From: Mytilus californianus
Lineage: Eukaryota
DNA: 64,000 nucleotides
NCBI RefSeq assembly: GCF_021869535.1
Contig: NW_026262593.1
Span: forward strand, 45,446,001 to 45,510,000
Direction of reading: 5' to 3'
A program made the translations under genes and the position numbers. The notes below the pieces were generated by a model that saw nothing but the letters and a program-made list of their open reading frames with translations, was not told the DNA's origin and made no database searches. Below, piece by piece: positions 1,186 to 52,714 of the stretch. Each line of letters begins with the position of its first letter. The first letter of the stretch is position 1.

Positions 1186-3538
1186 TTTGACTATCTCTGT
1201 TAGCCATGATGTTAATAAAGGAAATGATTATAAAGTTGAAAAAGAAGTTTTACTCACGTGTGAAATGGGAATATAAATGTCCAATTTAAGCTACTTAAAT
1301 CCAAACAGGGAAAACTACGTCACAGCTTACACTATTTAAGTTTATGTTGATCGTTGCAGTCTAGATGACGGACTAATACATTAAAACTCCCATTTACGTA
1401 GATTTTAAAGGAAAGAAGTACACAGTAATGAAGTATGGTTATGTTATAACACAGCAGTAAACGAACACAGTTCAGAATTAAAAACAAAGAACTAGATTCA
1501 CAAAATAAATGGCTTTCCTTTTCAAAAGAATTTGCAAAACCGAGTTCTTACTACGTGTACCTTTCTAAATATGGAACAATCAATAAGAGTCGTGCGAGAT
1601 TTTTTAACACGCCTACATTATATATACGCTTACAATAATTTTCCAAATCAAAATCAGGTATCGACAGCATACCGTTTCAAACGAAACTATATGATACTGT
1701 TTACGAGTTTATTTTTTTATCTCAAAATTTTCAAAAAGCAAAACTTATGTGTCGGAACAGAATGAATCAATTTTTCAAATGAATTATTATATTTTACACC
1801 TTAAACAATTTATTTTTCTATAATAAAAAAAATATGTCTGTAAAAGCGTGCAATTGCATCTCTTGTTCGCAAAGCTTGAAAAGATTTTCTTTGGGCGCTG
1901 TCATATTAATTTGCTCATGTAGGAACGATATATCATATAGGGTCAACGATGCTAAAGATCGTTAGAACTAAATAACCCTCGGGCAGTAATTAGTGTAGAG
2001 TAGCATGAGAATATAACTCCTTAACCATAAGACACAAATAAGTTAGGAAGAGTGGTACGCGCATAAAAACAACTAACCAAAAGACAAAAGAAACAAACAA
2101 TCGATCTAAGAGTATGCACACTTACCGAATGCTAGTTCAAAGCCAAATGTCTACTATTATATCCCCCCCCCCCCGAAAAAAAACCTTTCGTTTAAGCTAC
2201 ACGGGGACTACATTTCGGAATCGTCATCGTTTTATCATACTATTGAATTATGTTACTTACTAAAAATAACAGTCGATATAAACTTTTTTTCTGGAATTAG
2301 GTTCCTTATGAAAATAGAAATCCAGAATTTGAAAGCCAATACGCGAAGAGCTGTATATGACAAAAACAAATATGCTACACAGTGACCCAAGCTAGGATTC
2401 GGTACAGGGATTCGATATGTAGATATGTAGATGTTTTGTTGTATACAAAAGATTCAACGATGACTGTAGATGAGGGGAAAACTATATTATATGAATGAAA
2501 ATCTTATGACAGTGATGGCCTTGAAATTTGAACCTGATACGCGCCATATTATATATGTACTGTCGAAGCTTGTACATCTATGTTGACTTATTGTGTAATA
2601 CCAAAGGACTTTAAGTTCGTGTAATTTTAGTACCAGTAGACAACTCTAAATTCATTTGGTAATCTTACTGACAAAGACAATTATAGGTCATTTGCGAGTT
2701 TTATAACGATTGCTTGAATAATTGATAAACAAATGTACACTGTTTTTTTTCAAATTGAACACCTTGAATTTTTTTTAGTTATGCTGATATGTGTAAAATT
2801 AGCAGGTCAGTTGCTGGGTTGACACACTTTTAGTGGTAAAGTTTTATAAAATTAACGGTACCAAATTTTCTGCATCATTCCTTCGAAAGTTTTACGAACT
2901 CTATCCGAAGACCACTGATATTTGCCAGTTGTCGTTACCACAATCCAGTTCTCTTTATCTCCATTGATACACCACCAAATCTATACTTGATCTTCCAAAA
3001 AGGTATCAGGTTTTGCTTCTAGTCTTGTATTTTTTTTCCTATATACATTGTTTTGTTTTTAAATAATAAAATTGCACATCCAATCTCAATTTTAAATAGT
3101 GCATTGTAAACACAAGGTTGTATAAGGGGAAATACCTATTTTTGACTCCTATTTATTGAAGAAATAAACATTGACCATCCAGATAGGTGTTCTCTAATTT
3201 CCCCATATATATTGTGTCATTCTAGCAATCCTATTACTACAATCATATCTATACAAAAATGTACAAAAGCTTTATTTAAAGTCGGACATGTTTACATGTA
3301 TGACACATACAACACAAACTCTACGGAGCTTTTAAACCGACAAAGACAAACTTAAAACATAAGATATGATAATATATAGACATACATACATGTAAGACAT
3401 GGCATACACACAAGCTTCAATACACAAGTATACAAAATAATCATATTCAACAACACAAGCATACACATTTTAAAAACTAAGCATTCATTCAATTATTCAG
3501 TATTAAATGCAGATCTATTTTATGTTATTAAACACAGT

Positions 3539-6500
3539 TTAAGACATGGATTCTCCATTCGTTAAATACTTTGTCGGTTCATAAATATCATTTATCTGAA
3601 TATCAGCACCTACTGGTGGTATTGATGTATCGTCATACATGACACTATACATAGGATTTTCTGCTCCATGTACTTTTCCTTTTACATCATTTAATGATAT
3701 CCTTCTCCTGTAATGTTAAATCACTACTATTATTTTCACTTTTAAAATAAAAACAGATCTTAGAATAACATAGCTATATCATTTATTAATTGTTTTCACT
3801 TTCGAAATATTTGGTCGTAAATGGAGCGAATTTTATTACAGAAACTAGTGTTGTGTGCATGAAAATATTAATTTTTTTATACAAGATATAAATCACCAAT
3901 AAAAAACTTTCGATTATACAGCGTAAGAAAGATAAACCATGAATCATTAATCATTAACTAATGATATCAACGACAATGAATTAGACAGATTTCTATTTAT
4001 TTAACAAAAATGAAAATAAATACCTTCTGATGACAAAAACTGCAACAATAATACCTGCTACCACAACTGCCACACAAACTCCACCGATGATGTAACCTTA
4101 AAACATAAACCATTAAGTATGCATGTATATTTAACGTAACTGTTATCCCGATAATATTATTATGATAACGGGAACGACTTTCCAAAGAAAACGTTGCCAC
4201 CATCCATCTAATTTAACTTTTTTTCATTTCTCCTTTGCTGATGAACACCTACAGTCAATATAGTCGTAGTCTAGTAGTTGGTAATACAAAGAACCAGCAA
4301 CACGATCAGATTTGTTTTAACTTGAGTAGTAACACATCAGTAAGTGAAGGACCATCTAGTTTTAAAATTTCCATTACATGACGATCGAAGACCATACATG
4401 TAGTTATCAAACTTTTAATCATATAAGATTTTTTTCAGAACTATTTGATGATAAGGAACTTATATATTTGTCGAATTATGACAATCATACTTTGTAAATT
4501 CTCAGCATGACCTGCAACTGAATTTTAATAAGAATTAAAAAAACTGTCATTTATTCAGGATTTAACTTGTTATAATCGCAAATACATATAAATAAAGCAG
4601 CAACCATACGACAAAAGGTATAAAAATATGTCAAAAGAGTTACTGATTTGGACATTTTGAGGGACGAATCTATTGCTTTTATTACTCAATCCTAATTGAT
4701 TAATTCTGAATCAGTGCGGTAGCAATATGTACATGTACATAGTCAAACATAGCTCTTCCAAATTGTTTTCGTCCTGGGCTGATATGCAGTAAAAAGTAAA
4801 ATCACAAAAATACTGAACTCCGAGGAAAATTCAAAACGGAAAGTCCCTAATCAAATGGCAAAATCAAATGATAAAACACATCATTCGAATGGACAACAAC
4901 TGTCATATTCCTAACTTGGTACAGGCATTTTCAAATATAGAAAATGGTGGATTGAACCTGGTTTTATAGCGCTAAACCTCTCACTTGTATGACAGTCGCA
5001 TCAAATTTCGTTATATTTACAACGATGCGTGAACAAAACAGACAAAATAGGTGAAATAGTCACACTATGGGTACAACAGTCATCACTGTGTCACAATCTC
5101 AAAACAAACAAATATTTAACAAAAAAGCACAGAAAAGTAAAATCACAAAATTACTGAGCTCATAGGAAAATTCAAAACGGAAAGTCCCTAATCAAACGGC
5201 AAAATCAAATGATAAAACACATCAAACGAATGGACAACAACATCGTTAAGCATCTATAAAATTTAAAAACCACATTCATTGCTTCACTAGTCTGACGTCA
5301 GAAAATGTAAACGTCACATAGGAAGAAATCACTTAAGTTAAGATATCCAATCGTAGTATTAATTTATCGTAGGACATGTAGAAAAATCCGTCCGGTTGGA
5401 ACAAATTTTAATTGTATAGTTTATAGTTTTATGCATTTTAGTAATAGTTATATCATAAGGACGAGGAGTGTCAGTGTAAGATCATCCCGATGGCCAGAGG
5501 CCAGAGGGTGATCTAACACTGACACACCAAGTCCGAATGGGATAACTATTTTACATCCCAGCTGTTCTAGATTTGATAAAAAACCATTTACGCTTCATAA
5601 AATCTAGTTTAGAACGCCACACAATCATTCTTACATACTTTATACATTACTATATGGTATATAACCTTTATGAGCCCCGGAAACAATGTTTAAATATGTT
5701 AAGTTAACATTGATTGTATCCAGTCGTGCTAGTGTAGGGGTATGACTCGTGGGTCTATATGCCAAAGGTCTTGAGTTCGAATCCCAGCATAGACACTGAA
5801 TTTTTCATCATAAATTTTGATAGTTAGTCTTTTCCGAAAATATTTCTAAGTTTTAGTATTAATTTAACATTCCCGCCAAAATGTTACAGAACAAAGCAAA
5901 GCATGCAGAACAAAGAAACTCAAGCTAGGGTGATCTGGTAGGGGTGATCCGGCTCACCCCGGTAGAACAAAGGAAGTCCATTTTAGGTATTGAATAACAA
6001 CAAAAAGATCATCAAAAATAGTTTAACTATGTCATATCGGAAAGGCATCTAAAAATCATTTCATACATGGCACAAACAATTTGATTTACAGCTTTACTGT
6101 ACTGCCAGTGTACAAATTTTAGTTGTCAAAAAGTTTTTTTTTTTTTAGTTTGAATCATACACTTATTACCTGTATTTGACTTGTGTGTTGGTTTCTGTCC
6201 GGTGGCACCTGCAATAGTTTTATCAAATAGTTGAATAATATCATTTCGCAAATAATTTTCAACAGTCGAATACTTTTGTCAGTTTTAACAGTTACAAATG
6301 CAGAAGTCTTTACAAGTTGTCCGGTTATTCAGTCCAAATATATTATCGTATTTAGGTTTTTTTTAAATGTATTTAGAACACAGTCAATAAATAAGACAAC
6401 CATGAAGTAAAACAAGAAAATAACCGACTATAATAGGAGTAATTAAATAATATCATATACGTAAATATGCATTGTACACGTCAAAATAGTTATTAAAAAA

Positions 6501-9500
6501 GGAATTTCCACAATAATTGATAGTTTGAGTCTTATATGTTGATAAGGTTTCTTACTGCGTCTTAAGGGACCGCCTTGATTGGTGACTAGTTGTGTAGTTA
6601 GTGGAGTATTTGGTCTAGCCGTCTTCTTTTTCATTCCGTGAATAGTTGTAGGTCTCATTGTTGGAACAGGTGTCGGTGATTTTGACCGCGAAGCCTTCTT
6701 TGGTCTCGTTGCTGGAATAGGTGTCGGTGACAAAGTCGTCTTCGCTTTCGTCGTTCGCATTGGTTGATTAGTTGTTGTTGAAGGTGTTGTTTCTTGAGTT
6801 GTTGATGCAGATACAGGAGACTGAGTTGTTGTTAATTTAGGTGAATTTACTTTTGGAGTTAATGTCGACGATACAAAAGTCGTTGGAACACGGGTTGTAG
6901 CTTGTAATGACGTTGATGACGCCTTTACCAAGTTAGTGGTTAGTGCAGGTGGTTTTGTTGACTGAGTAGTTGGTGAAGTTGTTGTCGATGTGTGTCTAGT
7001 TGATAATTTTGTGGTCGATTTCTGTGTAGTTGGTGTAGTTATCTTCTTCGACTGAGTAGTCGGTGCAGGTGTTGTCGATTTCCGAGTGGTTCGTGCATGT
7101 GTAGTCATTGACTGTGTGGTCGGTTCAGGTGTTGTTGGTGACATAGTACTCGATACATGTGTCGTCGTTGACGGGGTTGTTGAATCAGTTGTTGCCCTTG
7201 GCAAAGTTGTGAGTTTAGGTGTTGATGTTGAATGGGTTGCAGGTGTATTTGTTGGTGTAGTTGTTCGCTTCTGATTAGTTGATATTGATGTTGTCCTTGT
7301 TGGAGTTGTTGTTGACAGAATAGTAGAAGACCTGGATTTTATGACAGTAGTCAATGGAAAAGTTTTAACAGATAAAGATGTGGTTTTAGGCAGACTAGTC
7401 GTTGATCTAGGTGTGGTTGGTATAAATTCTGTTGAATAAATCCATTAATTATCTAAACACGTTTATTGAATAGTTTTAATTATCCATTAGATTTTTCTAA
7501 AATATTGTAACGTATTTAATAAGTGTGCTAACAAATTCGTTGTCTTTTTTAAAACCTTATATAGATATAAGAAGATGTGGTATGAGTGCCAATGAGACAA
7601 CTCTCCATCCAAGTAAAAATTTATAAAAGTAAACCATTATAGGTCACATACATTTCTCCTTAAAAAATGTGTATAGATCTGCGGCATTCGAAAAACATTA
7701 CGGTTAACATGGTTAAGGCATCAGTTATGAATACCTGTATTATATAAATAAGGGAAGATGAAATAATATAAAAAAAAATACTAAACCCTTTATTTAATAT
7801 AGAAAGCGGTCTGATAATTTTTTCACTGACAAATTTTAGGAAAAAGGGATATTAACTTCAGCACAAATCAACTTTTAAAGGATCTACGTAATTGAGCGAC
7901 ACAATAGTATACCGGACCGAGAAAAAAAATTATGTTATTTTGAGTAAGACATGACACTCCCTTAGGCAAGAAAACGCTTACGGTTCCAAATATTTTGAAA
8001 TGTTCAAACGGTTAAATGGCTTTATAAGCTAAAGTGAAAAACTAAATGAAGTAGTTATTATAATAACCGATTATAAACCATATTTACTGTATTCGCATAT
8101 ACTGCTGTAATGATATTTTGGAAAGTTGCATGGGTAGTCATGCCATTTATAGTTATCATCTCGGCGAATCACGGCGCAATCTTCCAATGCTCCACTTGAG
8201 AAAAGAAATCCTCTGTTTCCTGGTCCTTGTCCACTTTCCCAGTTTCCCCAGGTCATTTTTTGGCCTATCGTTTGAAAAAAAAATGAAAATAAGCATTTAA
8301 TAGTCAGACAACAGTAAACACGCGTTATCAAAACATTTCATATAATAATATGTCATTTGTGTACCTACTTTGCTTTACTGTGATTAAGTAAAAATTTGAT
8401 CAATACAAATACATTTGTATGGGAAAAACACAACCTTGTTTTCGAGAAGTGATTAATATTTTTTTAAATTCATCAAAGAAACTAGACTGGCGTTTCGTTT
8501 CGTCTACACAGATTGGCACTCGAATTAAGAAAGACGAAGTACTTGACGGATCAAATTTCAAGTGCATTGAAAAATATAAGAATTACCCGATGAATGAATT
8601 GTATGTGTATAGTAATCACTGTGTAGCATCATCACCGGATATAGGTACCCCCGAATCGGTGGAAAAAAAAAATTTGAATTAGGGTAAAGGTCGACTTCTT
8701 CTTATTTTCATTAAAGTCTACGTTTTGCCGACAAGTAAAGTTTTGTGATACTGATTCCTAATATTGAAGCTACTATTTCGAGCTGATTATAACCATGGTG
8801 ACCTTTAATTGACTTTCTCTCTCTTCAAACTGTCAGATTCGGCTAAGGGTACCTGTTCAACGAAGCATATGACGAGTTCTAACTTGTTAAAAACGTATTT
8901 ATCCTTCAACTATTCATTTAAAATTTTCGTAGAACAAAGGTATATCATATTTAAGCTTGAACAATACTGTATTTTAAAATTAACTATTGTTTACACAGAG
9001 AAATTCATGTGAATAAAGCGAATAATAAATTAAATTGTATGCCGAAAAGTTGTTAACTGTACGGGGATTATAATAGGTACTTCTTGTTATTTTATTTTTT
9101 TTTTGCTTTGGGGGTTCCTATATCCAGTTGTGATGCTACACAGTGGCAATGGAGTGGCTACTGTAAACGATTCTTTTAACAGTTTTTTTTTCATTTGAAT
9201 TATTTGAAATTGTATATCAAATTTGATTTATAAGAACCTTACTGTCTAAGATGTCAGGTGAACTTTCTTAACTAGACTCAAAACTAGCGAACAAGAAGAT
9301 GTATCAAGATCAAGCTAGCCAACAACAATGAAAAACGCACCAAACTGATCATACATTTGTACATAAAAACCTGGTTTAAAAAAAAAAAAAACATGTAACG
9401 CCTGGTACTTTTCTTTTGTGATTATACCTACTCCATATTTAGTTGTAAATTTATATGTAAATAACGAATATGGAAAAAATAAGATTCTTCTTTAATGTAT

Positions 9501-11147
9501 TATTTTATAGCATATACTTTTCATATGGATCCTACTATTTGCACTTCTTCGAGATCCTTAAATGTAGATATTAGTAAACGAGCATACCATTTACCCATTT
9601 CCACTGTCCTTCCTTTTCTCTATCAGTGCCACCAATCCAGATACCTTTTCTATGCCAGCCAGCTGTTTGTAAGGCTTTCGTAATGAATTGTTGTTTTGTC
9701 ATGTCTTGTATCATTACCAAGTCTCCGTGGTGTTGTGTACAATATCGTCTTGCATCATACCAGGAGTGCTCGTCATGTATCAGCTCAATACATGTATCAT
9801 TGTAGGCAAACAAGTGGTTATCTCTTGGAATGCTCTGAGGGCATCGCTGAACATTCCCTATTGGGTAATTAATTAAGAAAATGAAAAATCGAATTTGATT
9901 GTTTTAACTGCTTCTTTATATCATACTGTCTTCATAGATACTTAATATTTGCAACCTTTTACATGAAATATTTGACAAAAATGTGTAATTATTATCGCGT
10001 GAAGTTTCTCTAGATGGAGTTTGAAATCAATGTCAAGGACAGCATACATACAGAAGATGCTGTTCATTTTAATTATAATCAGAGAGAATAAATTTAATTT
10101 ATTAACTCAACAATTGCAGACAAAACATCATAGAAGTGGTAGATTTATAAAATAGAAATACTTGCATTGATCAACATTAAGAATGTATTTACTCGAATGT
10201 ATAACTAGTATTAAATTTTAGATTGAATATATATGAAATCTTCAGAATTGTTTACCAGTACATGTAATTGCAGTTTAATGTTTGTTTTAAATACACAATA
10301 CTGTTAAAGATGTTTAAATATTTCATTCTTCTTTCTGTTATTTAGTCACACGGATCAACTATATATGAATAAAACTAAATATTAACGGTAATATAACCAG
10401 TGGCACATTAAATCACTTAAATTTTCCTGTTATTCGCCAACTTGAATTTTTTTTTACAGTTTTTTAGACAATTTATTATGATTTGTGTTTAATAACGGGA
10501 ATGACTAAATAATTTTGATTTGCTTATCACTTTAACATTGTCATAAAAACTTCGTTACGATGAAAATGAATAGTTAGGATCATGGAATCATACATTTGCA
10601 ACAATTAATACAATATTCGAGTAGAACATAATGTTATATAATATATCTTTATTGATATTTGATTATATAACACACACAAGTAAAGGCGCATTGACAAACA
10701 AAGATGTTAACATTTTGCAAAAATTAATTTTTTTATACAGATTATCTATTATAATCGTTTGAGTTTTCCTATTCTGTTTTCAGCAAAATGTTCTTTTTTC
10801 ATAGTTTTAAAACATTTTATCAAATGCCAAAAAAAAATATTAATGCTTAGACACATACACACTTAATATTTAATAATTCATGACAGGAGTAACAATTGTC
10901 TGCGAACAATTTCAAAATATAAAATCACATTTCACACAAAAGCATGTACACATACGAGAAAAATCAGACTTTTAACATGAGCCATCAATGGATGAGCATT
11001 GTACAGAAACCCTTGCTTGTCTGAACGCTCGTACCTCACACCTTAGACTACAGATTACCTACCGTGATCTACTATTCCGTCAAAAAACCATGGTTCACAA
11101 TAGGACAAAAATGAGACGAATATAATAAAAATAAATAATCTATCCAT
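3539..11147 (-). CDS. CTL-1: type I transmembrane C-type lectin with mucin stalk and tyrosine-motif cytoplasmic tail (7 exons, 561 aa)
   Basis: Exons (minus): 11147-11063 signal peptide MDRLFIFIIFVSFLSYCEPW; 9857-9588 and 8264-8088 lectin domain (WIGG, EDC, WHDYPC); 7428-6556 Thr/Ser/Pro stalk; 6208-6170 linker SATGQKPTHKSNT; 4096-4024 TM GYIIGGVCVAVVVAGIIVAVFVIRR; 3707-3539 tail ending NGESMS*. All junctions are GT-AG with matching phases. Total 1686 nt is one open frame. Confidence 0.88.
4793..5260 (+). repeat. Dispersed mussel-type repeat (AAAAGTAAAATCACAAAAATACTGAACTCCGAGG family) with internal partial duplication
   Basis: Near-identical copies occur at about 33862-34095 (minus), 46293-46520 (minus) and 54240-54640 (plus). 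The 5' segment is repeated at about 5135-5240. Lies in a CTL-1 intron. Confidence 0.8.
5443..5550. repeat. Imperfect palindrome / hairpin element
   Basis: Arms AATAGTTAT..GTGTCAGTGT.AGATCA.CCC pair with GGG.TGATCT.ACACTGACAC..ATAACTATT around a GGCCAGAGGCC apex. Confidence 0.8.
5722..5795 (+). pseudogene. tRNA-derived sequence (pseudo-tRNA or SINE head)
   Basis: Pol III A-box-like TAGTGTAGGGG and B-box GAGTTCGAATCCC at tRNA spacing. Stems are mismatched, so it is not a functional tRNA. Confidence 0.5.
7563..7650 (+). repeat. Short abundant dispersed repeat (AAGAAGATGTGGTATGATTGCCAATGAGACAACTCTCC family)
   Basis: The same motif recurs in both orientations near 13090-13225, 18276-18330, 25715, 31740, 33530-33640, 37065-37200, 42810-42980, 45570-45665, 59750-59825 and 60045. 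Confidence 0.8.
8617..9145 (+). mobile_element. MITE with CACTGTG termini and 5-bp TSD (Transib/RAG-like superfamily signature), copy 1
   Basis: About 35-bp TIR CACTGTGTAGCATCA(T/C)CACCGGATATAGGTACCCC. Flanks are GTAAT and GCAAT (4/5 match). Homologous along its length to 58943-59448 in the opposite orientation. Lies in CTL-1 intron 2. Confidence 0.8.
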
Positions 11148-11562
11148 GTTTGACAACAAATGAAATGATGATGCAGTTTTAGATAGGCAAGTTATATGTA
11201 GACAATCAGTATACTATCAGCTTGTCCAAACTAACATGTAGACAGTCCAGCATCGTACGATGTGATACATATATGTTTATCTATAAACCAAAATAAAAGC
11301 CATCATTTACATTAAATTGATAATGAAAAGGGATGATTTGTTTGTTGACAAGTCCTTCAGTTTTATTATTATTATTAATATCATTTTTATCATTCTTGTT
11401 ATATTATCGCTATTATTACATTGTATAATTTAGTCGTTTTGTCGTGTGATTATTAGGGAAGAGGAGAAATCCTTACGGAATCTACAACACTCTTTGTCAT
11501 TATACGTGATAATTAATCGTTGATCGATCTTTAGTTTTATATGGTGACTGTGTGGTGTGTAC

Positions 11563-12082
11563 TGTTTGTCTTTTCGCCGTTTTTCTTTTTTTTGCCATGA
11601 CATAATATTGTCAGATTGTTTTTTGTCTTTTCGCCGTTTTTCTTTTTTTTTGCCATGACATAATATTGTCAGATTGTTTTTTGTCTTTTCGCCGTTTTTC
11701 TTTTTTTTGCCATGACATAATATTGTCAGATTGTTTTTTGTCTTTTCGCCGTTTTTCTTTTTTTTTTGCCATGACATAATATTGTCAGATTGTTTTTTGT
11801 CTTTTCGCCGTTTTTCTTTTTTTTGCCATGACATAATATTGTCAGATTGTTTTTTGTATTTTCGCCGTTTTTCTTTTTTTTGCCATGACATAATATTGTC
11901 AGATTGTTTTTTGTCTTTTCGCCGTTTTTCTTTTTTTTGCCATGACATAATATTGTCAGATTGTTTTTTGTCTTTTCGCCGTTTTTCTTTTTTTTGCCAT
12001 GACATAATATTGTCAGATTGTTTTTTGTCTTTTCGCCGTTTTTCTTTTTTTGCCATGACATAATATTGTCAGATTGTTTTTG
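11563..12082. repeat. Tandem array, about 57-60 bp unit, 9 copies
   Basis: Unit CTTTTCGCCGTTTTTC(T)nGCCATGACATAATATTGTCAGATTGTTTTTTGT. Copies differ mainly in poly-T length. Confidence 0.95.
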
Positions 12083-20948: not shown

Positions 20949-23872
20949 ATGGAAACAGTATTATTATGCTTAAGCTTTTTCGTTGTACTATTAGAGGCAA
21001 ATGTCATCTTTAACAAAGGTAAGACACTTTAATTTGCAGAATACATTGATTGGTTGATTAGTGTTTAAAGCCACTTTCAGCACTATTGTGCTATCTCGTG
21101 GTGGTCAGTTTTTATTCGTGGAGGAATAAAGATGCGGAAATTATACAACAACCAAAAAACAACAAAGAAAGACATCTATAGGTCAACAAGTGTTGTTTTG
21201 TTCAATTTAAGCGGTTTACATGTTTTGGGTTGTCCTGTGTTCTTGTGTTGCAATTGCATTGAAGTTTATCCCTCATTTTTATATAATATATAAAGTATGT
21301 TAATTTCTACAATTGGTCTATTCGCCAGTTGATTGTATTTTTCGCTTTATTCATGGTTCGTTTTTGTGGTTATAGAATAGTATGTATTTTTGTTCTTTAG
21401 TTAACTAAATTAAAGCCTGATAGTATATTGCAGGACTTGCATATTAATTTGCCCGTCGTATTTTCTTTATTCACGTTTACTCTTTACAGCTGATATAACT
21501 CGTTGTCCTCCAATTCTTCCTCGGAACTCAAACTTGTTTGCCTACATAGACACATGCTTTGAAATGGTTCACGACGAACATTCATGGAATGATGCTAGAA
21601 GACACTGTCAGCAACATGGCGGAGATTTAGCTGTCATCAAAGACCTAACAAAACAACAGTTTGTAATGAATGCTTTGAAATATCTTCGTTGGGACAAAAA
21701 GGGTGTCTGGATCGGCGGAACAGACGGAGACAAGGAAGGGGAATGGAAGTGGGTCACAGGTAAATATCACGTGTCAGTAATTGGACCAAGTAAGCACATA
21801 TGTTCACCTTACATAACTGCATATTGTCACAGAAATCAATATCAGTATTTCTGTATAGTTAATCTATTTTCGAATGGTGAATTTCCTTAAATTGTACAAA
21901 CAAAATTGAGTTTAATATTGAACAAAATATAACTCGTCTAAGAATGATTTGAAACATTTCAAACTAAGATGATATTAATTTTTGTTTTTAATTGAAGAAA
22001 AGCTTATAGAGAATTGTTAAATTCAAAATATAAAGGACATGGAAAACAATTTGTATCTACACGTTTTCAAAATATGTTTGTTATATCAAAAGTAAGCGAA
22101 ATAAATATTTATATTTGATAAGGAGAACAGATGACCTGGGGTTACTGGCAACATGGCCAAGGAGTGACTCAAACTGGATTCCTGTTTGCAAAGGGGACTT
22201 TTGAGGACTGTGCTCAGATCCGTGTTGATGACTCTTATAAATGGCATGATTTTCCTTGCAGTGGTGGCCCAGCTTATCATTATTCGAGTATTTGTGAATA
22301 TAGTAAGTATTATCTAGATTTCAAACGGATAAATACCTATATGCCAATGTTAATACATTGAAACAAATCTTTACTAACGAACAGCCGGGATGTACCTCCA
22401 AAATATAATGTAAGGTTGGGATTTTTTTTCATTCCCCTTTTCATGACGTAGATTGTACGTATATACAATGTATTAGACATAAATCCCTATAACTTAATGA
22501 AAATATACCCCCTGAAGTTTCAATGAACACACCATTGCAACGATATGTAACTTCGTGTTCTGACACGTCTTACCATCGTTAATACATGTACCTTTGCAGT
22601 TAAATGCAGGACATTTCTTTTAAACGATCGCGCGAATGCACGAATTTTGAAGAGGGAAAATATAAATCGGCCAATTATGTGGTCTCTTCAATTCAAAAAG
22701 TAAATAGTATTATATATCCATCAATAACATCCTCCAGATGTTTGCAAGATACTTGTCTTTCAGACATTCATAAAAAAGTGATTTTTGTAATTCAGTTGCT
22801 TTGAATCTATATACTTCTTGTATTTTCGGGGGGGGGGGGGGGGGGGGGCTGCATTTGTCTCGTATTCTGACCTTTCACTTTTACATAAAATGGAATTCAA
22901 AACCTGGATTTAATATTTAAAGAAAAAAACAAAACAAAAATAGAATAGAGGAAAAGTATTTTTTTCAGTAGTACATGCATAAAGGCATAATTACCCATTA
23001 CATATAGCATGACATGTTTCACCTGCTTCCCCATTCGGAGCACCTGAACCCATCACCGATTTTTGTCAATCTTAAGTTTTTTGTACTGTGTTTTCTGTAC
23101 TGTTGTTTGTCTTTTTGTTGTTATCCTTTTGGTCATGTTGTTGTCAGTTTTATTGGACCTATAGATTTTTATTGCCTAAATGTTTAAATCTCTTACCTTT
23201 CACTTTCGAAGTATTAGAAATAAACGGTAGTGTGACAAGAATTCTTCTGTATGACTCTTTTAATAAAACAAACGCAAGAAGAAACCGAGAGGACAATCAA
23301 AACTAAAAACCAAAACCTCTCTCTTAATAATTCAAAGGTGACTTTCTTGATGGCTTCTTTACAATACAACTTAAAATAAAGGATACCATAGATGCAATAA
23401 GGTTTGCATCATATTTTTAACACCTTGAAATTGACATGTATGCAAAGACAACATCAATTCGTTTCAACACATTTATGCAGACATTGTTTTGTAGGGTGCA
23501 TACATAATTGTTTAACAATAATTTATTTTACAACAAAAGCAACACACGTATTTTTCAGAAATGCCTAAAATTTTGACATCTCCTACAACTATGACGAACG
23601 TCGAAACGCCTGTGCCAACAACTATGCCTAAGACAGGAACATCAACTTCAACCACGTTAGCAAATTTTGAAACACCAGCACCGACAATTCAGCCAAACGT
23701 GGAAACACCAGCACCGACAATTTTGCCAAACGTTGAGACACCGGCCCCTACTTCTTTACCAAATGTTGAAACACCCGCACCTAATAAAGATACAACAGCA
23801 TTTACAATTAGGATGAATAACAATCCTCCTAGTGCTGTAATAGTTAATAAAGAATCCGTCGTTATCGGCTGA
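20949..23872 (+). CDS. CTL-2: secreted C-type lectin with short ETPAP-repeat mucin tail (4 exons, 277 aa)
   Basis: Exons 20949-21018 (signal METVLLCLSFFVVLLEA), 21490-21759, 22123-22302 and 23559-23872. All are GT-AG phase 1. Lectin motifs WIGG, EDC, WHDFPC. AATAAA near 24004. Confidence 0.92.
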
Positions 23873-25275: not shown

Positions 25276-28200
25276 TATTCGATTCGCCGCCAGAACAAAA
25301 GGTATTCTCATACCACATCTTCTTATATCTATATAAAATTAAAAAATGCATATTGAGAAATCGAAGGCTTTTGTCGAAGCTTTTACATCTCTGTCGACAC
25401 ATACAGCCGATATTCGATCAGTTGTATGTCATGGCATGAAGCAAACATAGTACTATAATTGCATTTTTTATCAAGTTCAATATAGAGATTCGTTCAACGT
25501 AGTCACCATATTTTGAATGTTAAATGATAATGCTAGATCCGATTCATATTTCCTGATATTTGTAAAAGGTATATATATATATATACTGAAGGTTGATCTT
25601 CAGAAGGAACGTAAAACAGACCTATGATTGTTCGGGATTTTTTTTATAGTTGTTGGGGCTAAGTGTAAGATTTAGATTGCATTGACATTACATTTTTTTC
25701 TGTAACAATATAAAAATAAGGAGATGTTGTATGATTGTATATGAGACAACTACCCACAGGAGACAAATAGATGAGAATGTAAACACAATTACAGGTCACC
25801 ACACGGCCTATAACAATGAGCAAAAGTCATACCGTATGTTAAGCAATAACAGTCCTCAGAATGACAAAATATGAAACAACTCAATAGAGAAAACAAACAG
25901 CTTAATGCATGGTTGCTGTCCGTCCTTAATGTTTTTCGTTATTAGAAAAAAGAGAACATCTCTATTACGATTGAATTACTTTGGAAGTAAAGACAATTTA
26001 AAAGAAGAATTGTGGTTTAGTAAAGAATGACCCTCTAATGCATTTAAAAAAAATACTCTTCATATTCCAAAATTTATCACAAATAACAGTTTTGACCTAG
26101 TACATGTATCTTCAGGCATCCATAATTTTGTCATAATTATGTTTAGAAATAAACTATGATTTTGTTAGAACCTCATAGTATACATAGAAGAAACAGTGAA
26201 CTTGTGAATTTTATGAAAAATTGTGCCTTTTCGAAAATGATCCTCGTTAGGAATATTTTCACAAGAAACCGGTCCTAACTATTGTATTGAATCGCATAGG
26301 ATCCGTAGCAAGGGTCCGAAACATACTTTAAACAGAATTGTTTTCAGTTTAGGAGGGTGTAGTAAAAATAGGGATGATTACACAAGGGCACTGCATAAAT
26401 TATTGAATATGATGTATAAAGACGATGACCACGTCTACTTTGGGAGGCTAGTTGAAAACATTCATCACATTGATAGATCTGGGGAAGAATTTAGAGAATA
26501 CCTATAAAAGGCCATAATCAATTTTCCCATTTAAAGAAGTGTGTGGCAGTTAACATTTTTGGAGCATCTGGGATCATCCCCCGGTTTTTGGTGGCGTTCG
26601 TGTTGCTCAGTCTTTAGTTTTCTGTGTTTTTTGTCTTATCGTTGTTTTTCGTTTCTTATTTTTGTAATGAAGTTGTCTGTATTTTTTCGAATTATGAGTT
26701 TGAATATCCCATTGGTATCTTCCGCCTCTCTTTTGTAACAGTGGTATGTTTTGGAACTGTTTTGAGGCCAAGATCATTATTTTGATATTTTTGATGATCC
26801 AAAATAGCATATAAAAAGGATTGACTGATCAGATTGACAAAAATGCTGATTACAATGCTACTATATCATTATTGAAACGGCAACATGTATATATAAGAAC
26901 AGTAAGTCTTACATTTGATTTAGGATATCCGTCAGTTACTGTATACAGCAACCCCATGAAACAAAAACCAGTAAATATCTAGTCTAAGAGATCAACATAT
27001 GCTCTTCAACAAATATACAAGTATCTATACAAATTGTCAAACTCTAAATCGTTCCTAGTTTACTGAAGTTATTATTATCTTCTGGAAGGTAGCATGATTA
27101 ATGGATGGGTCAATTAGAGTCTATACACTATGGTCCTGAAAAAGATTTAACTACTTGGCGTCGACAATATGGCGGTAATAAGACTTTTTTAAGTTTTCGT
27201 TCTTCTCGGGAATTTTAGTATCACATCAAGAAGGAGTATACAATTCCTGCAAATTTGTATAATTAATAACCGAAAAGTATGATGAAAAGTCAAACAAATT
27301 TGCAAAATCCATCTGTTAAAAACCAATAAGTTTCATAAGCTTCAGGAGCTTATTAGGTTGTACCTGACTAGTGTTAATTTAACAGACACTTCTAAAGATC
27401 TGCCATCAAAATCAAGTTTGTAAAATGACTAAAACATTAAGACATCGCAAAAGACAACCACTGCCGATCTTCCTGGTTTTGGACGGAACTATGATTGTCA
27501 GAATTATTGCAGGTTTTGAGACTTCCCCGTTTTCATTTTCGTTCAGCAGAATAACAAAAGTTACTAAATAACGTACAAAAATTTAACCTAAAAGTAAAAT
27601 TCAAAATTGTCTAGATTCAAAAGTACTTGTTTTTTGAAAAATAATTCATGATATTAGAAGACTTCTATTATCTTATCCAAGACAATTAGACAACTTTCCA
27701 TCAGAGACCAAATGAAAAAGAAATTTTAAAACAACTATAGGTCATCGATCGGCCTTCAACAATGAGCAAAACCCATACTCAATTTTCAGCTATAAAAAGC
27801 CCAGAAATTACAAATGTAAAAAAATTCAAACGAGAAAACTAACGGCCTGATTTACCATGGTCGCAGTATAGCAATTATTCCAATTAAGATATTCATCTAT
27901 TGACCTGGATGGCATGCCCCCCCCCCCCCCCCCCCAAAAAAAAACAAAAAAAAAACAACAACAACTCACAAATGACGAACAATACCGTAGTCTAAAACCT
28001 AATAGTTTGACGGAATTATACCGATTAGGATCAAGCGTATCCCTTGTGAATAACGTGAAGACCATTTGTTGCATGTTTATCCATAATTACTGGTTTGCCT
28101 AAACATACTATTTATAATTTTCCATCTATAACCAACAATAATATGCGGGATGAACTCCCGAAAATTATTGTTTTTTTTTAATATAAGTTGATATTATTAA

Positions 28201-29967: not shown

Positions 29968-32900
29968 TCAACGGCGCCTCCTGCGCCCAATTATAGCCGT
30001 TGGTGGAGGAAGGGTAGAGGTAGGAGTTTCTTTGTTTGGCTGAGGTGTCGTACGTGCTGGAGTTTCAATATTAGGCAGATTTGTTGTTGGTGCTGGAGTT
30101 TCAGCTTTTGGAATTGTTGTCGGCGCTGGGGTTTCAACATTAGCCATGGTAGTTGTTGGTGCTGGAGTTTCTGCTTTTGGCATTGTTGTCGGCGCTGGAG
30201 TTTCAACATTAGCCATGGTAGTTGTTGGTGCTGGCGTTTCAGCCTTCGGCATTGTTGTCGGCGCTGGAGTTTCAACATTAGTCATAGTTGTTGTTGGTGC
30301 TGGCGTTTCAGCCTTCGGCATAGTTGTTGGCGCTGGAGTTTCAACATTAGACATTGCAGTTGTTTGTGGCATTGTTATTTTTGACGACATCACCGTCGTC
30401 GTTGCTGATGATGAAATGTTGGTCATAGGAGCAAGCGTTGTAGCCATTTTTATTTTTGCTACAAAAGGAAAATAAATAATTCGGCTGTTTGATCTAATCT
30501 TTTAAACATTGCTGATGAGAATATGACAGTGAAAGAAGGTATACATTAAGTATTTTAAGTAATGTCAATAACTGTGGATATTTTGTATTACTGTTGCAGC
30601 ACTATGTGGAATAAAAATCTTATATGTAATAAAATAACTTTAAACAAATGAAAGCACACGCTTAGAGTGCAATTATTATTACACATAGAGTCGATGGTGT
30701 CAACTATATCTATACTTAAAAAAACTATATGTGTTACAAGTGTTACACATAGTGTATGGTAACTGTAACAACTGTTACACATAAAACTGCGAATATAAAA
30801 AGTGGCATAATTGAAAATCTTTAACATCAAGGTCCGTGTTAAACTATTTTTTTTACCGTTTTTTTTTTTAAATTTTCTGCTTTCAAGCTTTAACACATTA
30901 ACGTTGGTTAAAACGGCAACATACCATGCAAACATAATTTGTTTTAGATCAACCATTTTGGTATCTGGAAGGGGCCTGGGATTTTAGTTCGGACGGATAG
31001 TTGACAGATATTTTTCGACCTTGAGGCGTTTTGTTTGTTTATTCAAAATTATACATAAGGAATGCAGAGAAACGGGGATATTGAAGTACTAGAACAAATT
31101 TTGTTGAGACAATACTTATGATTTTGTGATATGTCATTTCCATTTAGTCCAGTAGATTTCTTTTTGTTTTGTCATCAGGCAAAATTGTTTGCAGCTTAAT
31201 ATTACAAGATTAAATCAGGATGTACAATGTAGGATTTTAAATTGATTCACATTTTCTATCCGGGTGTCTTATTTTACTACGCGATATATATATATATGTT
31301 TTGCTCATAGGTAAAGGCCGAAGATGAGATGTTGATTACGTCCTATAGTCTTTTGGTCTTGTGTGGTTGAGAGTCTCCTCATTGGTAAGCATACCATATC
31401 TCCTTATTTTGATATGAAAGCACCTTCACTGGTCATGCAGTATGTAGTAGTTTTGTTAATATTTGTGTTCATACTTTTATATATACTGCGGTGAACGGTT
31501 ATACGTACTGGTGAATGTAATTATAGCTGAAGTTATATTGGGCTATTTTTAACATACAATTGTGCATTGCTGACTGTCTTATTTCCTTTTCTTTGATTAT
31601 TTAAAGCATAAATCATTGCAGGTATTTGCTTTTTTCATTTGCTTCCCATTTTTGTCATACTGGGGCCTTTTATAGCTTACTATATAAGTTATAAGTTTTG
31701 CTCATTCTTAAAGCCACACAGTACCCTAAATAGACATACGGAGATGTGGTAAGATTGCCACTTATAGACAGTCCACAATAGGCAAATCACTTGGATGCAA
31801 GCAACTATAGGCAACTGTACAGCCTTCAACGATAATCATTTTTCAAAGTCAGATTATCACGTGCAGATATCAGGAATCCAAGAGCAAAGTCCATGCCGTG
31901 TTAAAATATTTCAATGTTAAGATATAAATGTACAGTGTTTGCATTAAATCTAATAAACACATGATCAATCTTAATAAACTACAGACCATGTGAGCATGAT
32001 TCACCTACAAGGATCTGGCAACGCTCTGGTATACTTTCTATTGTGAAGACCGTTTTGGGGTCCTTGAATTATGACGTAAGGACACATATCTTCATCTTTT
32101 TAAGGAAGTTTCATATGTTTACGTAGTTATTATCAGAAGAGAACCTAGAAGGAAGCTTTGACACATGATCTGTATTTCTGTATTTGAATGAAACATATGA
32201 TATTTATATCTTACGGAATTCACAGGCATACGAATAGGTATAGCCAAAAGCTAGTATTGGTTTACACGGGTAATCATGCCAGTGACCTCCATCATCACGT
32301 CGTATGAGAGCGCAATCTTCATTACCACCATTTGCAAACAGAAATCCTGTGTTGTGATTATTTCCTTGTCCATCTGCGAATCGGCTGTAAGAAATCTTGC
32401 TACCTACATAAAGAAATAAGATAGTTGCTGTTAGAAAAAAAATATTGACATACTCTGATAAATGAAAAGATTAGAGAGAGTACTTTTAAGTGAAGGGGTT
32501 CTTGTTATTTGCAGATGCCAATTAAACACGTGATTTTACCTGTCTCGTTTTGATACCCTTAAAAGTTCACTGAAGATTATTTCCGATGGTGTCTTGTAAT
32601 AAAAATATGTTATTACATGATGTTGCATTTGCTGAACTATTAAAAAATTCGCGATTGGAATTTTTTTAACTGAATTTTGGTGAAGTAAACTGATTCTTAT
32701 AGCGTACGAAAATACATATCTTCAACAGCCCCTTACGAAATGTCAATTATTTTAAATGTATTTTTGTAATTCGTTAATGGCTCTATTAAAAATGAGGATT
32801 TTAACGTTGCGTTCATACATATTTGTGTAGGAAAACGGAAAACGAATTATTCGTCCTCTATAATCAATAGCCAATGTGGTCGCCCTATGTCCCCAATGGG

Positions 32901-50447: not shown

Positions 50448-52439
50448 TCATATACGAGTGAATATGGGTAGTTCATCAAGTTTGACATTATAATTACGCA
50501 AATATTGAGGGCCATTAATAACCCGTCCGTCTAATAACGCCCTCCATCTGCCTAGAGGTAAATATATATCTCTTGAACTTGCCCCCTTGTCTAACACAGG
50601 TGCTACAAGTGTGTTATTTCCAAGCAAAAATTCGGAGTCAATTGTTTGGCACTCTTTATCTAACGGGGCTATCCACCATAACGGGCGAATAATAGGAGCA
50701 CCGGTCTGAACAGATTCTTCCGCCAGTTCAATTATAAGATCGGAATATTCTTCGTGCAACTTCACAAATTTTCGGGATATATTGACAACTTCATCGTCGT
50801 ACTGCCATGGTACAATAGAAAACTGCATGGCCGGAAGTAGTGCAGTAGCCTCTAACCACCTAATAAATAACTCACGGTCTGGCTTATTTCCTTCATATGC
50901 ATTTCCTCCTATCATATCAGGCAATACGAATGGATATCCAAGTAAGCCGAATGCCAATGCAGTATTGATCAGCGTTTTTAATCCATTTTTATTTTCCCAG
51001 TTCGAATTTTTATCAAGCATGCGTACAAATACTGGTAAATGTTGTGTGCTGACACCAACTCGAACTTCTTGATGGCGAACACCAGTATCAGAGGCATATG
51101 CTAACTCGGCCCATTTAGTTGGATAGAAATTCGGACTGTCATATGTGGTTTCGAAAATATTTGGCAGCCAGTTTGTTTCGCCTGCATCAAATTTGAACGA
51201 ACTTAAATTGTATGTTTTCTGTAAAAATTGTAATTTATCAATAAACCACTGCACTGCATCATTATTTGAAACATCTAAAATCCCCGCTGCATTCCCATCC
51301 CACCATGAAACAAGAGCCGGCAGTAATGAATCATATTGTCTTACCAGAAAGAATTTAGATGCTGCTTCTTGAAATGTTAATGAATCAATATTGAAGAATG
51401 GATGGACCCAAATAGTTACTCTAAATCCCATAGCATTTAGTTGTTTAACCATTTCAGTTGCATTAGGAAATTTGTTGACATTAAAAACCATATCACCATA
51501 TTTCGGAGTCCAGTCATCATCTATTTCTACTTGTGAATGCGAAAAATTATAATTTAGAATATTTGAAGCAAACTCCATCACAGTTGTTTGATTTATATCT
51601 TTATGGTACTGGGCCCATGTTGACCAAATCGGATACTTAAATAATTTTCTATCTGGTATATCTGATGGTTTAGAAAATGAAGCCGACATGAAATCATGAA
51701 TCTTTCGAACGTTATCGGCGACACAAATTTTGTAAGACAAGTGAGGATAACCCCCTTTAATGTTTGTATATGGATACTTTTCATATTTAGCCATTAGGCA
51801 GATTTTCTTATCAAACGTTTGGTTGATACTAATATAAAGCGGAACATCGCTACTAATGTTTATCCCTATTCCGTGTGTATTGATGAAATAACGTTCCTGT
51901 ACACCACCAATACGCTTGGCGTATGAATCATTAGCAACGAAAGCTGAGAGATTCAATGACGTCTGTTCCATGGGCCAGAACTGGTTCCAGTCCTCGTAGC
52001 CACCATACCAGTGCGCACCATCTAAATCGAAACAATCTAATAGTATTTGATCAGAGCAAGAATACGTCCTCCAATATACATCATAGCACTCTGCAGATGC
52101 ATATTTATTATAAGATATATGTAAATCTTTCGTACCACTCCAATCTAGACAAAGTGCATTACTGCTACTTCCGCAGTCAGTCGCAACTATTTTGGTACTT
52201 CCGGTATTTGATAATTGTCCGGATAGACGAACATCTGTATCTGAATTTTTTATTTTCAAATTCCAGTAATATTTTTCTAAATGTAAATTTCCAACTACGT
52301 ACTCGTCTGTAATTTGAGGCTCCTCATTATTATGTCGTCCTGCTTGCCAGGCAATTATTCCTACAATCACACTGAGCAATATCAATGAAAGTAAGACGAA
52401 ACCAACTTTCATTCTTCCATTAATTTTTTGTCCGGACAT
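50448..52439 (-). CDS. MYORG: Myogenesis-regulating glycosidase-like GH31 glycoside hydrolase (type II membrane protein, 663 aa)
   Basis: Uninterrupted ORF with an N-terminal TM (VGFVLLSLILLSVIVGIIAW). Motifs: PIWSTWAQY, EIDDDW, nucleophile motif FKFDAGE, RMLDK, LPDMIGG and FIRW. A splice acceptor 8 nt upstream of the ATG implies a separate 5' UTR exon. Confidence 0.92.
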   Translation of the reverse strand: MSGQKINGRMKVGFVLLSLILLSVIVGIIAWQAGRHNNEEPQITDEYVVGNLHLEKYYWNLKIKNSDTDVRLSGQLSNTGSTKIVATDCGSSSNALCLDWSGTKDLHISYNKYASAECYDVYWRTYSCSDQILLDCFDLDGAHWYGGYEDWNQFWPMEQTSLNLSAFVANDSYAKRIGGVQERYFINTHGIGINISSDVPLYISINQTFDKKICLMAKYEKYPYTNIKGGYPHLSYKICVADNVRKIHDFMSASFSKPSDIPDRKLFKYPIWSTWAQYHKDINQTTVMEFASNILNYNFSHSQVEIDDDWTPKYGDMVFNVNKFPNATEMVKQLNAMGFRVTIWVHPFFNIDSLTFQEAASKFFLVRQYDSLLPALVSWWDGNAAGILDVSNNDAVQWFIDKLQFLQKTYNLSSFKFDAGETNWLPNIFETTYDSPNFYPTKWAELAYASDTGVRHQEVRVGVSTQHLPVFVRMLDKNSNWENKNGLKTLINTALAFGLLGYPFVLPDMIGGNAYEGNKPDRELFIRWLEATALLPAMQFSIVPWQYDDEVVNISRKFVKLHEEYSDLIIELAEESVQTGAPIIRPLWWIAPLDKECQTIDSEFLLGNNTLVAPVLDKGASSRDIYLPLGRWRALLDGRVINGPQYLRNYNVKLDELPIFTRI

Positions 52440-52714
52440 AAAAACTCCTGAAATGTTTTAATGATATGTTATTTCCACAATTAAATTGACAAAAATATGT
52501 AAATCTTAATGAATAAGAGGACGATACATGTCTAAATTTCGGGGGGAGGGGGGGGGGGGGGATTTATAAACAGTTAATCTACTCTTCTTATAGTAGAAGT
52601 TGCAAGGACGAAAGCTTTAACTGACTTCGCTTGTGTCCTATTTTAGCTTAGAATTACTGAAAATTATTTAAAACCGCAAGGGTTGACAGGGGAAAAAAGA
52701 TGGGACTTTAAAAC

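What the first reader, a model, noticed from the sequence alone, without database searches (positions are those of the whole stretch)
3539..6208. Hidden linker, transmembrane and signalling exons turn CTL-1 into a receptor
Seen in sequence: three small exons missed by the ORF track splice in frame after the mucin exon. They give a 23-aa hydrophobic helix, an RRRR stop-transfer stretch and a ~57-aa tail containing ENPMYSVM, VMYDDT and DIYEPT. Established: NPxY is a PTB-binding/clathrin internalisation motif and YxxM is the PI3K p85 SH2 consensus; here the two overlap on one tyrosine. Inference: an endocytic or signalling lectin raised above the glycocalyx on a ~290-aa O-glycosylated stalk.
Basis: partly seen in the sequence, partly recalled or inferred. 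Interest (0 to 1): 0.72.

Follow-up and report, generated by a model that had tools for sequence, protein, structure and literature searches.

The report
Mussel membrane-anchored C-type lectin-like receptor
The three small exons are real and make this mussel gene a single-pass surface protein with a lectin-like head, a sugar-rich stalk and a conserved tyrosine-motif tail, but the same layout is already annotated in a related mussel and its function is untested.

Summary
It has a signal peptide, one C-type lectin-like domain (CTLD), a 291-aa Thr/Ser/Pro stalk, a 13-aa linker, a 22-23-aa membrane helix, RRRR and a 57-aa tail.

- **Gene models:** four models in Mytilus edulis and M. coruscus carry the same linker, helix and tail. 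One is an NCBI M. edulis model named "mucin-2-like". Splice sites sit at identical positions in both species.
- **RNA evidence:** one transcript-like contig from a public run joins 4024/3707. The other two junctions rest on homology only, because no run covered them.
- **Conservation:** the tail core (HGAENPMYSVMYDD and PPVGADIQIND-x-YEPTKY) is invariant across three mussels. Substitutions there are mostly synonymous. No relative of the tail was found outside Mytilus.

A type I membrane CTLD receptor on a mucin stalk is well supported. Endocytosis or PI3K signalling is only motif inference:
- YSVM is also an AP-2 YxxΦ signal.
- NDIY equals layilin's talin-binding N(D/E)IY repeat.
- The sugar-binding site is non-canonical (Q-G-P-G and WHD).

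This is a new member of a known kind. The scan has noted other head-stalk-membrane families in this genome, but not this gene.

The parts
11063..11147 (-). Exon 1: ATG and signal peptide (MDRLFIFIIFVSFLSYC, then EPWFF...). Donor GTAGGT.
   Evidence: 96.6% identical to the first exon of the M. coruscus gene. Hydropathy peak of 1.88 at residue 4.
9588..9857 (-). [quoted passage not shown]
   Evidence: Pfam Lectin_C, E 4.6e-12, 47.1 bits against a cut-off of 22.6. 90% identical to M. coruscus and 78% to M. edulis.
8088..8264 (-). Exon 3: C-terminal third of the CTLD, carrying Q-G-P-G and WHD in place of EPN and WND. Donor GTAAAT at 8087. A second in-phase donor, GTTTAT, follows 8079.
   Evidence: The orthologues read ...ICEY-N-FIPTT across this junction, which fits the 8088 donor.
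6556..7428 (-). Exon 4: 291-aa Thr/Ser/Pro-rich mucin-like stalk.
   Evidence: 58% T+S+P. No Pfam family. Only 31-49% identical to M. edulis and M. coruscus proteins, while both ends of the protein are conserved.
6170..6208 (-). Exon 5: 13-aa linker (S-ATGQKPTHKSNT-G).
   Evidence: Same exon with the same cag|GTG...ACAG|gta boundaries in L001 and L002.
4024..4096 (-). Exon 6: transmembrane helix YIIGGVCVAVVVAGIIVAVFVI and the start of RRRR.
   Evidence: Kyte-Doolittle peak 2.99; the only such segment in the window. Orthologous exons in L001 and L002. Covered by the X1 contig.
3539..3707 (-). Exon 7: rest of RRRR, cytoplasmic tail with NPMYSVM, MYDD and NDIYEPT, and the TAA stop.
   Evidence: The X1 contig joins it to exon 6. 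94.6% identical to M. coruscus and 80.4% to M. edulis, with an invariant core.
3271..3538 (-). 3' untranslated region, with AATAAA at 3271-3276.
   Evidence: X1 contigs run from 3706 down to 3312. The signal was read.

Best explanation
One seven-exon gene of a Mytilus mussel encodes a type I single-pass surface glycoprotein.

Shown or read directly from the sequence:
- A cleaved signal peptide and one CTLD head.
- A roughly 290-residue stalk that is probably heavily O-glycosylated and holds the head far from the membrane.
- A short linker, one membrane helix, a polybasic RRRR stop-transfer stretch and a 57-residue tail.
- The tail core is under purifying selection.

Inferred mechanism: the head binds an extracellular ligand, possibly not by the canonical Ca2+/sugar site. 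The tail then docks cytosolic adaptors. NPMY and NDIY are NxxY motifs of the kind read by PTB and FERM-F3 domains. YSVM, which overlaps NPMY on the same tyrosine, is a YxxΦ signal for AP-2. The most likely outcome is adaptor-driven internalisation or sorting of the receptor and its cargo. My recalled parallel is the overlapping NPxY-YxxL signal of LRP1 (from memory, not checked here).
For: - **Gene model:** canonical splice sites and an open 561-aa frame.
- **Domain:** Pfam Lectin_C. The nearest solved relatives are CTLDs of the endocytic mannose-receptor family and collectins.
- **Topology:** hydropathy and a unique helix plus basic cluster.
- **Same architecture elsewhere:** P0002 (555 aa) and P0003 (562 aa, 'mucin-2-like') of M. 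edulis, and the first halves of P0004 and P0005.
- **Exon boundaries:** identical in L001 and L002.
- **Selection:** dS 0.16-0.24 against dN 0.04-0.09 over the three exons. Tail core dN/dS is 0.06-0.23. 44 invariant columns in the tail alignment.
- **RNA evidence:** a spliced contig joins exons 6 and 7 at depth 380.
- **Motif rarity:** NPxY occurs in 2.2% of shuffled tails and NPxYxx[LIMFV] in 0.6%.
Against: - No experiment or binding data exist.
- Two of the three junctions have no read support. The one raw-read RNA run laid (X19) shows no expression of the gene.
- X1 is only guessed to be RNA and also holds some intron-like sequence.
- The signal lacks the aromatic residue at -5 of FxNPxY.
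- Conservation is known only within one genus. The tail has no detectable relative among 1.84 billion representative proteins, so the motif pattern cannot be tested over deep time.
- Motif matching after the fact is permissive. Yxx[LIMFV] occurs in 70% of shuffles.
Confidence: 0.55

Rival explanations
1. A layilin-like adhesion receptor. The tail links the surface CTLD to the actin cytoskeleton by binding talin or other FERM proteins through NDIY, NPMY and the juxtamembrane RRRR. It does not drive uptake.
For: - Layilin is also a type I CTLD membrane protein. Its ten-residue talin-binding site is ESG(F/W)V plus N(D/E)IY (PMC2132847).
- The tail here has NDIY followed by E, and this is invariant as ND-x-YE.
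- N[DE]IY occurs in 0.5% of shuffles and two NxxY motifs in 2.3%.
- Basic juxtamembrane clusters (RKK, RKR) bind ERM proteins in thrombomodulin and CD93 (PMC6852297).
Against: - The ESG(F/W)V half of the layilin site is absent; the tail reads GADIQI instead.
- The profile search with the tail did not retrieve layilin.
- In M. edulis the motif is NDMY, which falls outside N(D/E)IY.
- Layilin has no mucin stalk.
- The CTLD was not compared with layilin's, because no layilin sequence was available from a tool.
Confidence: 0.2
2. A phosphotyrosine signalling receptor. After ligand binding, Tyr in NPMYSVM is phosphorylated and recruits PI3K p85 through its SH2 domains (YxxM), or a phospho-dependent PTB adaptor.
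For: - YSVM fits YxxM and is invariant.
- NPxYxxM occurs in 0.12% of shuffles.
- Oyster membrane CTLs do signal through tyrosine motifs: the hemITAM receptors CgCLec-TM1 and CgCLec-HTM act through Syk/ERK (PMC13027682).
Against: - YxxM alone is common by chance (21%).
- The tail has no YxxL/I, so it has no hemITAM.
- No kinase, phosphorylation or expression data exist.
- The same residues are explained equally well by sorting signals that need no phosphorylation.
Confidence: 0.12
3. Mainly a membrane-tethered mucin, acting as a barrier, lubricant or shed decoy. In this reading the stalk is the functional part, and the CTLD and tail only position and turn over the protein.
For: - The stalk is more than half of the protein and evolves fast in length and repeats. 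M. edulis has regular TTPAPTTQ-type repeats.
- NCBI names the orthologue 'mucin-2-like'.
- In CD93, O-glycosylation of the mucin region stabilises surface expression and limits shedding (PMC6852297).
Against: The CTLD (78-90% identity) and the tail (80-95%) are far better conserved than the stalk (31-59%). Selection therefore acts on the two ends.
Confidence: 0.1
4. The three small exons are chance open frames or belong to another gene, and CTL-1 is a secreted protein that ends after the mucin exon.
For: - Reading past the donor at 6556 gives 37 more codons and then a stop.
- The M. coruscus model P0001 does exactly this.
- No reads link exon 4 to exon 5.
Against: - Identical exon boundaries and purifying selection in two other species.
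- Four gene models use these exons.
- A spliced contig joins exons 6 and 7.
- There is no other start or upstream exon for a separate gene between 6556 and 3539, only repeats.
Confidence: 0.03

Closest known systems
Mytilus edulis 'mucin-2-like' (P0003, 562 aa) and the C-type lectin domain-containing proteins P0002, P0004 (M. edulis) and P0005 (M. coruscus)
   Same: Same seven-exon layout, signal peptide, CTLD (78-90% identity), mucin stalk, linker, helix, RRRR and tail with NPMYSVMYDD and ND-x-YEPTKY.
   Different: The stalk is only 31-59% identical and differs in repeat structure. P0004 and P0005 are mis-fused with the next tandem gene through a cryptic donor after ...SIPP. None has been studied.
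Vertebrate CTLD group 14 (thrombomodulin, CD93, CLEC14A, CD248/endosialin)
   Same: Type I membrane proteins with an N-terminal CTLD, a Pro/Ser/Thr-rich O-glycosylated mucin-like region, a single membrane span and a short tail. The tail has a basic juxtamembrane cluster in some members (PMC6852297).
   Different: No sushi-like or EGF modules lie between the head and the stalk. The tail is unrelated. There is no evidence of common descent beyond the CTLD fold.
Layilin
   Same: Type I CTLD membrane protein whose tail carries N(D/E)IY repeats and YxxΦ motifs and binds the talin head (PMC2132847).
   Different: No ESG(F/W)V repeat, no repeated 16-18-aa LH1 units, and a long mucin stalk instead of a short neck. 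No sequence match of the tails was found.
Oyster membrane C-type lectins CgCLec-TM1 and CgCLec-HTM
   Same: Bivalve CTLD receptors with a membrane span and a tyrosine motif in the tail. They have been shown to signal in haemocytes (PMC13027682, PMC12842671).
   Different: Those use a hemITAM (YxxL) and Syk. This tail has no YxxL/I. They are not described as having a mucin stalk.
NPxY/YxxΦ endocytic receptors (LDL-receptor family, mannose-receptor family)
   Same: An NPxY motif about 20 residues below the membrane. It overlaps a YxxΦ on the same tyrosine, as I recall for the distal LRP1 signal (own knowledge). The CTLD's best solved matches are CTLDs of the mannose-receptor family.
   Different: No aromatic residue at -5, a single CTLD, no LDLa or FnII modules, and no functional data.

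Membership tests
C-type lectin-like domain superfamily (Pfam PF00059) | Significant match to the Lectin_C profile, with WIGxTD, EDC and terminal C...CE landmarks. | tested here: met
   Exon 2 part scores 47.1 bits against a cut-off of 22.6. Exon 3 part scores 15.6 bits on the last 31 profile positions. Single-domain PDB matches reach down to 1e-11.
Ca2+-dependent carbohydrate-binding C-type lectins (true lectins) | EPN or QPD tripeptide plus WND at Ca2+ site 2. | tested here: not met
   Aligned to human mannose-binding protein (1hup), EPN corresponds to Q-(G)-P-G and WND to WHD, with a 6-residue loop insertion. The paralogues in the window have GQGV or GQGN.
Type I single-pass membrane proteins | N-terminal signal peptide, one C-terminal hydrophobic span of about 20 residues, and positive charges on the cytosolic side. 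| tested here: met
   Hydropathy peaks at residues 4 and 484 only. RRRR follows the helix directly. No dedicated signal or TM predictor was available.
CTLD group 14 (thrombomodulin/CD93/CLEC14A/CD248) | Sushi-like region and one to six EGF repeats between the CTLD and the mucin region. | tested here: not met
   The CTLD exon splices directly to the mucin exon. The stalk has no Pfam family.
CTLD group 14 (thrombomodulin/CD93/CLEC14A/CD248) | Pro/Ser/Thr-rich mucin-like region, then a membrane span and a cytoplasmic tail. | tested here: met
   58% T+S+P over 292 residues, followed by the helix and a 57-aa tail.
FxNPxY endocytic signal (LDL-receptor type) | NPxY with an aromatic residue at -5. 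| tested here: inconclusive
   NPMY is present and invariant, but position -5 is Ala (HGAENPMY). Adaptor binding is not testable here.
PI3K p85 SH2 docking site | Phosphorylated YxxM. | not testable with these tools
   YSVM is present and invariant, but it occurs by chance in 21% of shuffles. Phosphorylation is unknown.
Layilin-type talin-binding site | ESG(F/W)V (LH2) directly followed by N(D/E)IY (LH3). | tested here: not met
   LH3 is present (NDIY; NDMY in M. edulis), but LH2 is absent and GADIQI stands in its place.
hemITAM C-type lectin receptors (CgCLec-TM1/HTM, Dectin-1 type) | A single YxxL/I in the tail. | tested here: not met
   The four tyrosines read YSVM, YDDT, YEPT and YLTN, so there is no YxxL/I.

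The most novel reading that the evidence does not exclude
A genus-restricted mussel receptor in which one tyrosine carries three overlapping codes: NPxY for PTB/FERM adaptors, YxxΦ for AP-2 and pYxxM for PI3K. Phosphorylation would then switch the same CTLD-on-a-stalk receptor between uptake or cytoskeletal anchoring and PI3K signalling. That would be a compact invertebrate counterpart of vertebrate endocytic and phagocytic receptors, built on a head that no longer has the canonical sugar site.
Probability: 0.1. Interest if true: 0.55.

Novelty: new member of a known kind. Interest (0 to 1): 0.3.

Why it matters
Bivalves have hugely expanded C-type lectin repertoires. Most studied members are secreted, and reviews single out the few with a C-terminal membrane anchor as unusual (PMC12842671).

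This gene adds a small, apparently Mytilus-restricted subfamily of type I CTLD receptors with a long mucin stalk and a strongly conserved tyrosine-motif tail. That gives a concrete candidate for how mussel cells might couple surface recognition to uptake or to the cytoskeleton.

It also shows that several public gene models of this subfamily are wrong. One is a read-through and two are fusions. This matters for repertoire counts. It does not reveal a new kind of system.

Tried and rejected
- **Read mapping.** I laid four runs on 3200-9000. Only run X1 gave an informative joint, at 4024/3707. The raw-read RNA run X19 and runs X2 and X4 hit only interspersed repeats (4790-5300, 7560-7650). Junctions 6556/6208 and 6170/4096 therefore stay unconfirmed by reads.
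- **Tail profile search.** I searched the tail profile against 1.84 billion representative proteins. Apart from P0003, the seven hits are repeat proteins matching a KVYGAANP...Y-type unit several times over; most look bacterial, and P0008 and P0009 were not read. I rejected them as spurious.
- **Family scans.** Pfam found nothing on the stalk or the tail.
- **Word searches.** The three searches returned only five Mytilus proteins.
- **Paralogue helix exon.** A candidate for the plus-strand paralogue at 25935 (FVIRKKRTSL) was rejected, because no full hydrophobic span precedes it.
- **hemITAM reading.** Rejected, because there is no YxxL/I.
- **Group 14 membership.** Rejected, because there are no EGF or sushi modules.
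- **Full-length search.** I did not search with the 561-aa model, because a spliced protein has no reference and I did not type it.
- **Layilin CTLD.** I could not compare it, because no tool gave me a layilin sequence.
- **Earlier scan notes.** The near-place look-up was empty.

Full report
**What is in the sequence**

The window is AT-rich (about 33% G+C) and has no N. On the minus strand I read seven exons with canonical GT/AG sites:

| Exon | Coordinates | Content |
|---|---|---|
| 1 | 11063-11147 | ATG and signal peptide |
| 2 | 9588-9857 | CTLD, first part |
| 3 | 8088-8264 | CTLD, second part |
| 4 | 6556-7428 | stalk |
| 5 | 6170-6208 | linker |
| 6 | 4024-4096 | membrane helix |
| 7 | 3539-3707 | tail and TAA stop |

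The three exons of the finding have compatible phases. They read S-ATGQKPTHKSNT-G, then YIIGGVCVAVVVAGIIVAVFVI, then RRRR and a tail holding ENPMYSVM, VMYDDT and DIYEPT.

**Is it more than chance?**

- The helix is the strongest hydropathy peak of the protein. It is also the only hydrophobic run of 19 or more residues followed by a basic cluster in any of the six frames of the 64-kb window.
- A word search with the stalk exon found Mytilus proteins. Two M. edulis proteins have the same order of parts and a nearly identical linker, helix, RRRR and tail. They are P0002 (555 aa) and P0003 (562 aa, NCBI name 'mucin-2-like').
- A search restricted to the C-terminal 93 residues added P0004 (M. edulis) and P0005 (M. 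coruscus).
- I fetched the loci. The linker, helix and tail exons lie in the same order with identical boundaries in both species: cag|GTG...ACAG|gta, aag|GTTAC...AG|gtat, and tacag|GAGAAGG...TAA.
- Over these three exons, synonymous divergence is 0.16 (M. coruscus) to 0.24 (M. edulis), against non-synonymous 0.04 to 0.09. From HGAEN to the end, dN/dS is 0.06 to 0.23 (the counts are small).
- 44 columns of the tail alignment are invariant, including HGAENPMYSVMYDD and PPVGADIQIND-x-YEPTKY. The changes cluster just below the membrane.
- The flanking intron and UTR DNA is 68-81% identical. The coding parts are 89-94% identical (differences).

**Reads**

Only one read-laying run was allowed. Run X1 is from 'organism A' and its kind is a guess, but it has only 87 Mb of contigs. 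It holds a 396-nt contig at depth 380 that covers 4098-4023 and then 3706-3387. It skips 316 nt whose ends are GT..AG on the gene's strand. This confirms junction 4024/3707 and a 3' UTR reaching at least 3312. An AATAAA lies at 3271-3276.

The contig stops two letters past the helix exon. Those letters, 'ag', fit both the intron and the end of exon 5, so it says nothing about 6170/4096.

No run covered the CTLD, stalk or linker exons at 95% likeness. The one raw-read RNA run (X19) had no reads on any exon. X1 also holds a piece inside the intron (about 3867-3975) and one at the exon-3 acceptor, and I cannot explain these. The two upstream junctions therefore rest on homology with gene models, not on reads.

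**What the protein is**

- **Head.** The head is a CTLD (Pfam Lectin_C). Its best solved relatives are CTLDs of the mannose-receptor family and collectins, at roughly 30% identity. Against human mannose-binding protein, the Ca2+/sugar site is not canonical. EPN aligns with Q-(G)-P-G and WND with WHD, and the loop carries a six-residue insertion. The three other CTLD genes of the window share GQG at this place. I therefore call it lectin-like, not a proven lectin.
- **Stalk.** It is 32.5% Thr, 13.4% Ser and 12.3% Pro, and the whole model holds a single N-glycosylation sequon, which lies in the CTLD head. It is the fast-evolving part, at 31-59% identity. In M. edulis it has become a regular TTPAPTTQ-type array.
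- **Pattern.** Conserved ends with a variable spacer is what one expects of a receptor on a stalk.

**How it may work**

The architecture is shown. The function is inferred. The tail has two NxxY motifs, NPMY and NDIY. YSVM overlaps NPMY on one tyrosine.

In shuffles of the tail:

| Motif | Share of shuffles |
|---|---|
| NPxY | 2.2% |
| NPxYxx[LIMFV] | 0.6% |
| NPxYxxM | 0.12% |
| N[DE]IY | 0.5% |
| YxxM | 21% |
| Yxx[LIMFV] | 70% |

However, the same four residues are a YxxΦ AP-2 signal that needs no phosphorylation, and the classical aromatic residue at -5 of FxNPxY is missing.

NDIY equals the LH3 repeat N(D/E)IY of layilin. Layilin is itself a type I CTLD protein, and its ten-residue ESG(F/W)V-N(D/E)IY site binds talin (PMC2132847). 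The LH2 half is absent here, and M. edulis has NDMY. Basic juxtamembrane clusters bind ERM proteins in CD93 and thrombomodulin (PMC6852297).

I rank the readings as follows:
- adaptor-driven internalisation or sorting first;
- cytoskeletal anchoring second;
- phosphotyrosine/PI3K signalling third;
- a mainly mucin role fourth.

**Comparison with what is known**

- Type I CTLD proteins with a mucin-like region are a known kind (CTLD group 14, PMC6852297). This protein lacks their EGF and sushi modules.
- Bivalve membrane CTLs are known. Examples are CgCLec-TM1 and CgCLec-HTM with a hemITAM, and ScCTL-1 with a C-terminal anchor (PMC12842671, PMC13027682). This tail has no YxxL/I.
- The tail has no relative outside the Mytilus cluster among 1.84 billion representative proteins. 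The other seven hits are repeat proteins matching a KVYGAANP...Y-type unit several times over; most look bacterial and I rejected them as spurious.
- The CTLD-based word search found only the same four proteins in the allowed length range.

The subfamily therefore looks small and restricted to this genus, within the limits of these searches.

**Species**

The nearest DNA is M. coruscus (dS 0.16, introns about 80%). That fits, but I did not test it.

**Verdict**

The membrane-receptor architecture is well supported. The exons are already in a public gene model of a sister species, and the proposed signalling is untested motif reading. This is a new member of a known kind, of modest interest.

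Noticed in passing
L002:4001-21394, L003:2588-13422 and L003:8001-17690 (M. coruscus); P0004 (M. edulis): Public gene models of this subfamily are faulty. P0005 and P0004 fuse two tandem neighbours by leaving the tail exon at a cryptic donor after ...SIPP. P0001 reads through the donor of the mucin exon into the intron. The second M. coruscus copy has in-frame stops in its CTLD exon (GNV*QC) and its helix exon (LIIN*VC) but an intact tail exon, so it is probably a young pseudogene or an assembly error.
   Followed up: partly
window 21381-23872 (+), 33447-29971 (-), 39471-37218 (-): Three more CTLD genes lie in the window, 39-47% identical in the first CTLD exon. Two are followed by short mucin-like exons (23561-23872 and 29971-30501). 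The second of these ends ...AIIGRRRRR and then a stop. My scan found no membrane-helix exon for any of them, so they may be secreted.
   Followed up: partly
window 11430-12063: A minisatellite of about ten copies of a roughly 60-bp A-rich unit lies about 300 bp upstream of the gene's ATG. It is open in several frames (the KKEKRRKDKKQSDNIMSWQ repeats in the ORF list).
   Followed up: no
window 4788-4891, 5133-5232 and 7558-7646: Interspersed repeats sit inside the introns and reach very high depth in all four runs. The two copies at 4788-4891 and 5133-5232 match the same element in the M. coruscus locus. These repeats, not the gene, account for most of the run hits.
   Followed up: partly
window 8079-8088: Exon 3 has two in-phase donors nine bases apart, GTAAAT after 8088 and GTTTAT after 8079. 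They give 561-aa or 564-aa products (...ICEY-K-FIP or ...ICEYSKY-E-FIP). The orthologues fit the first.
   Followed up: partly
window 50451-52457 (-): An uninterrupted 669-codon open frame has an N-terminal hydrophobic anchor (…VGFVLLSLILLSVIVGIIAW…), like a type II membrane protein. It is unusually long for a single exon in this genome.
   Followed up: no
window 3867-3975 and 8244-8292: Run X1 holds contigs over a piece of the intron between the helix and tail exons, and over the acceptor of exon 3. Both have diverged or unlike continuations. Retained intron, DNA carry-over or a paralogue were not resolved.
   Followed up: no
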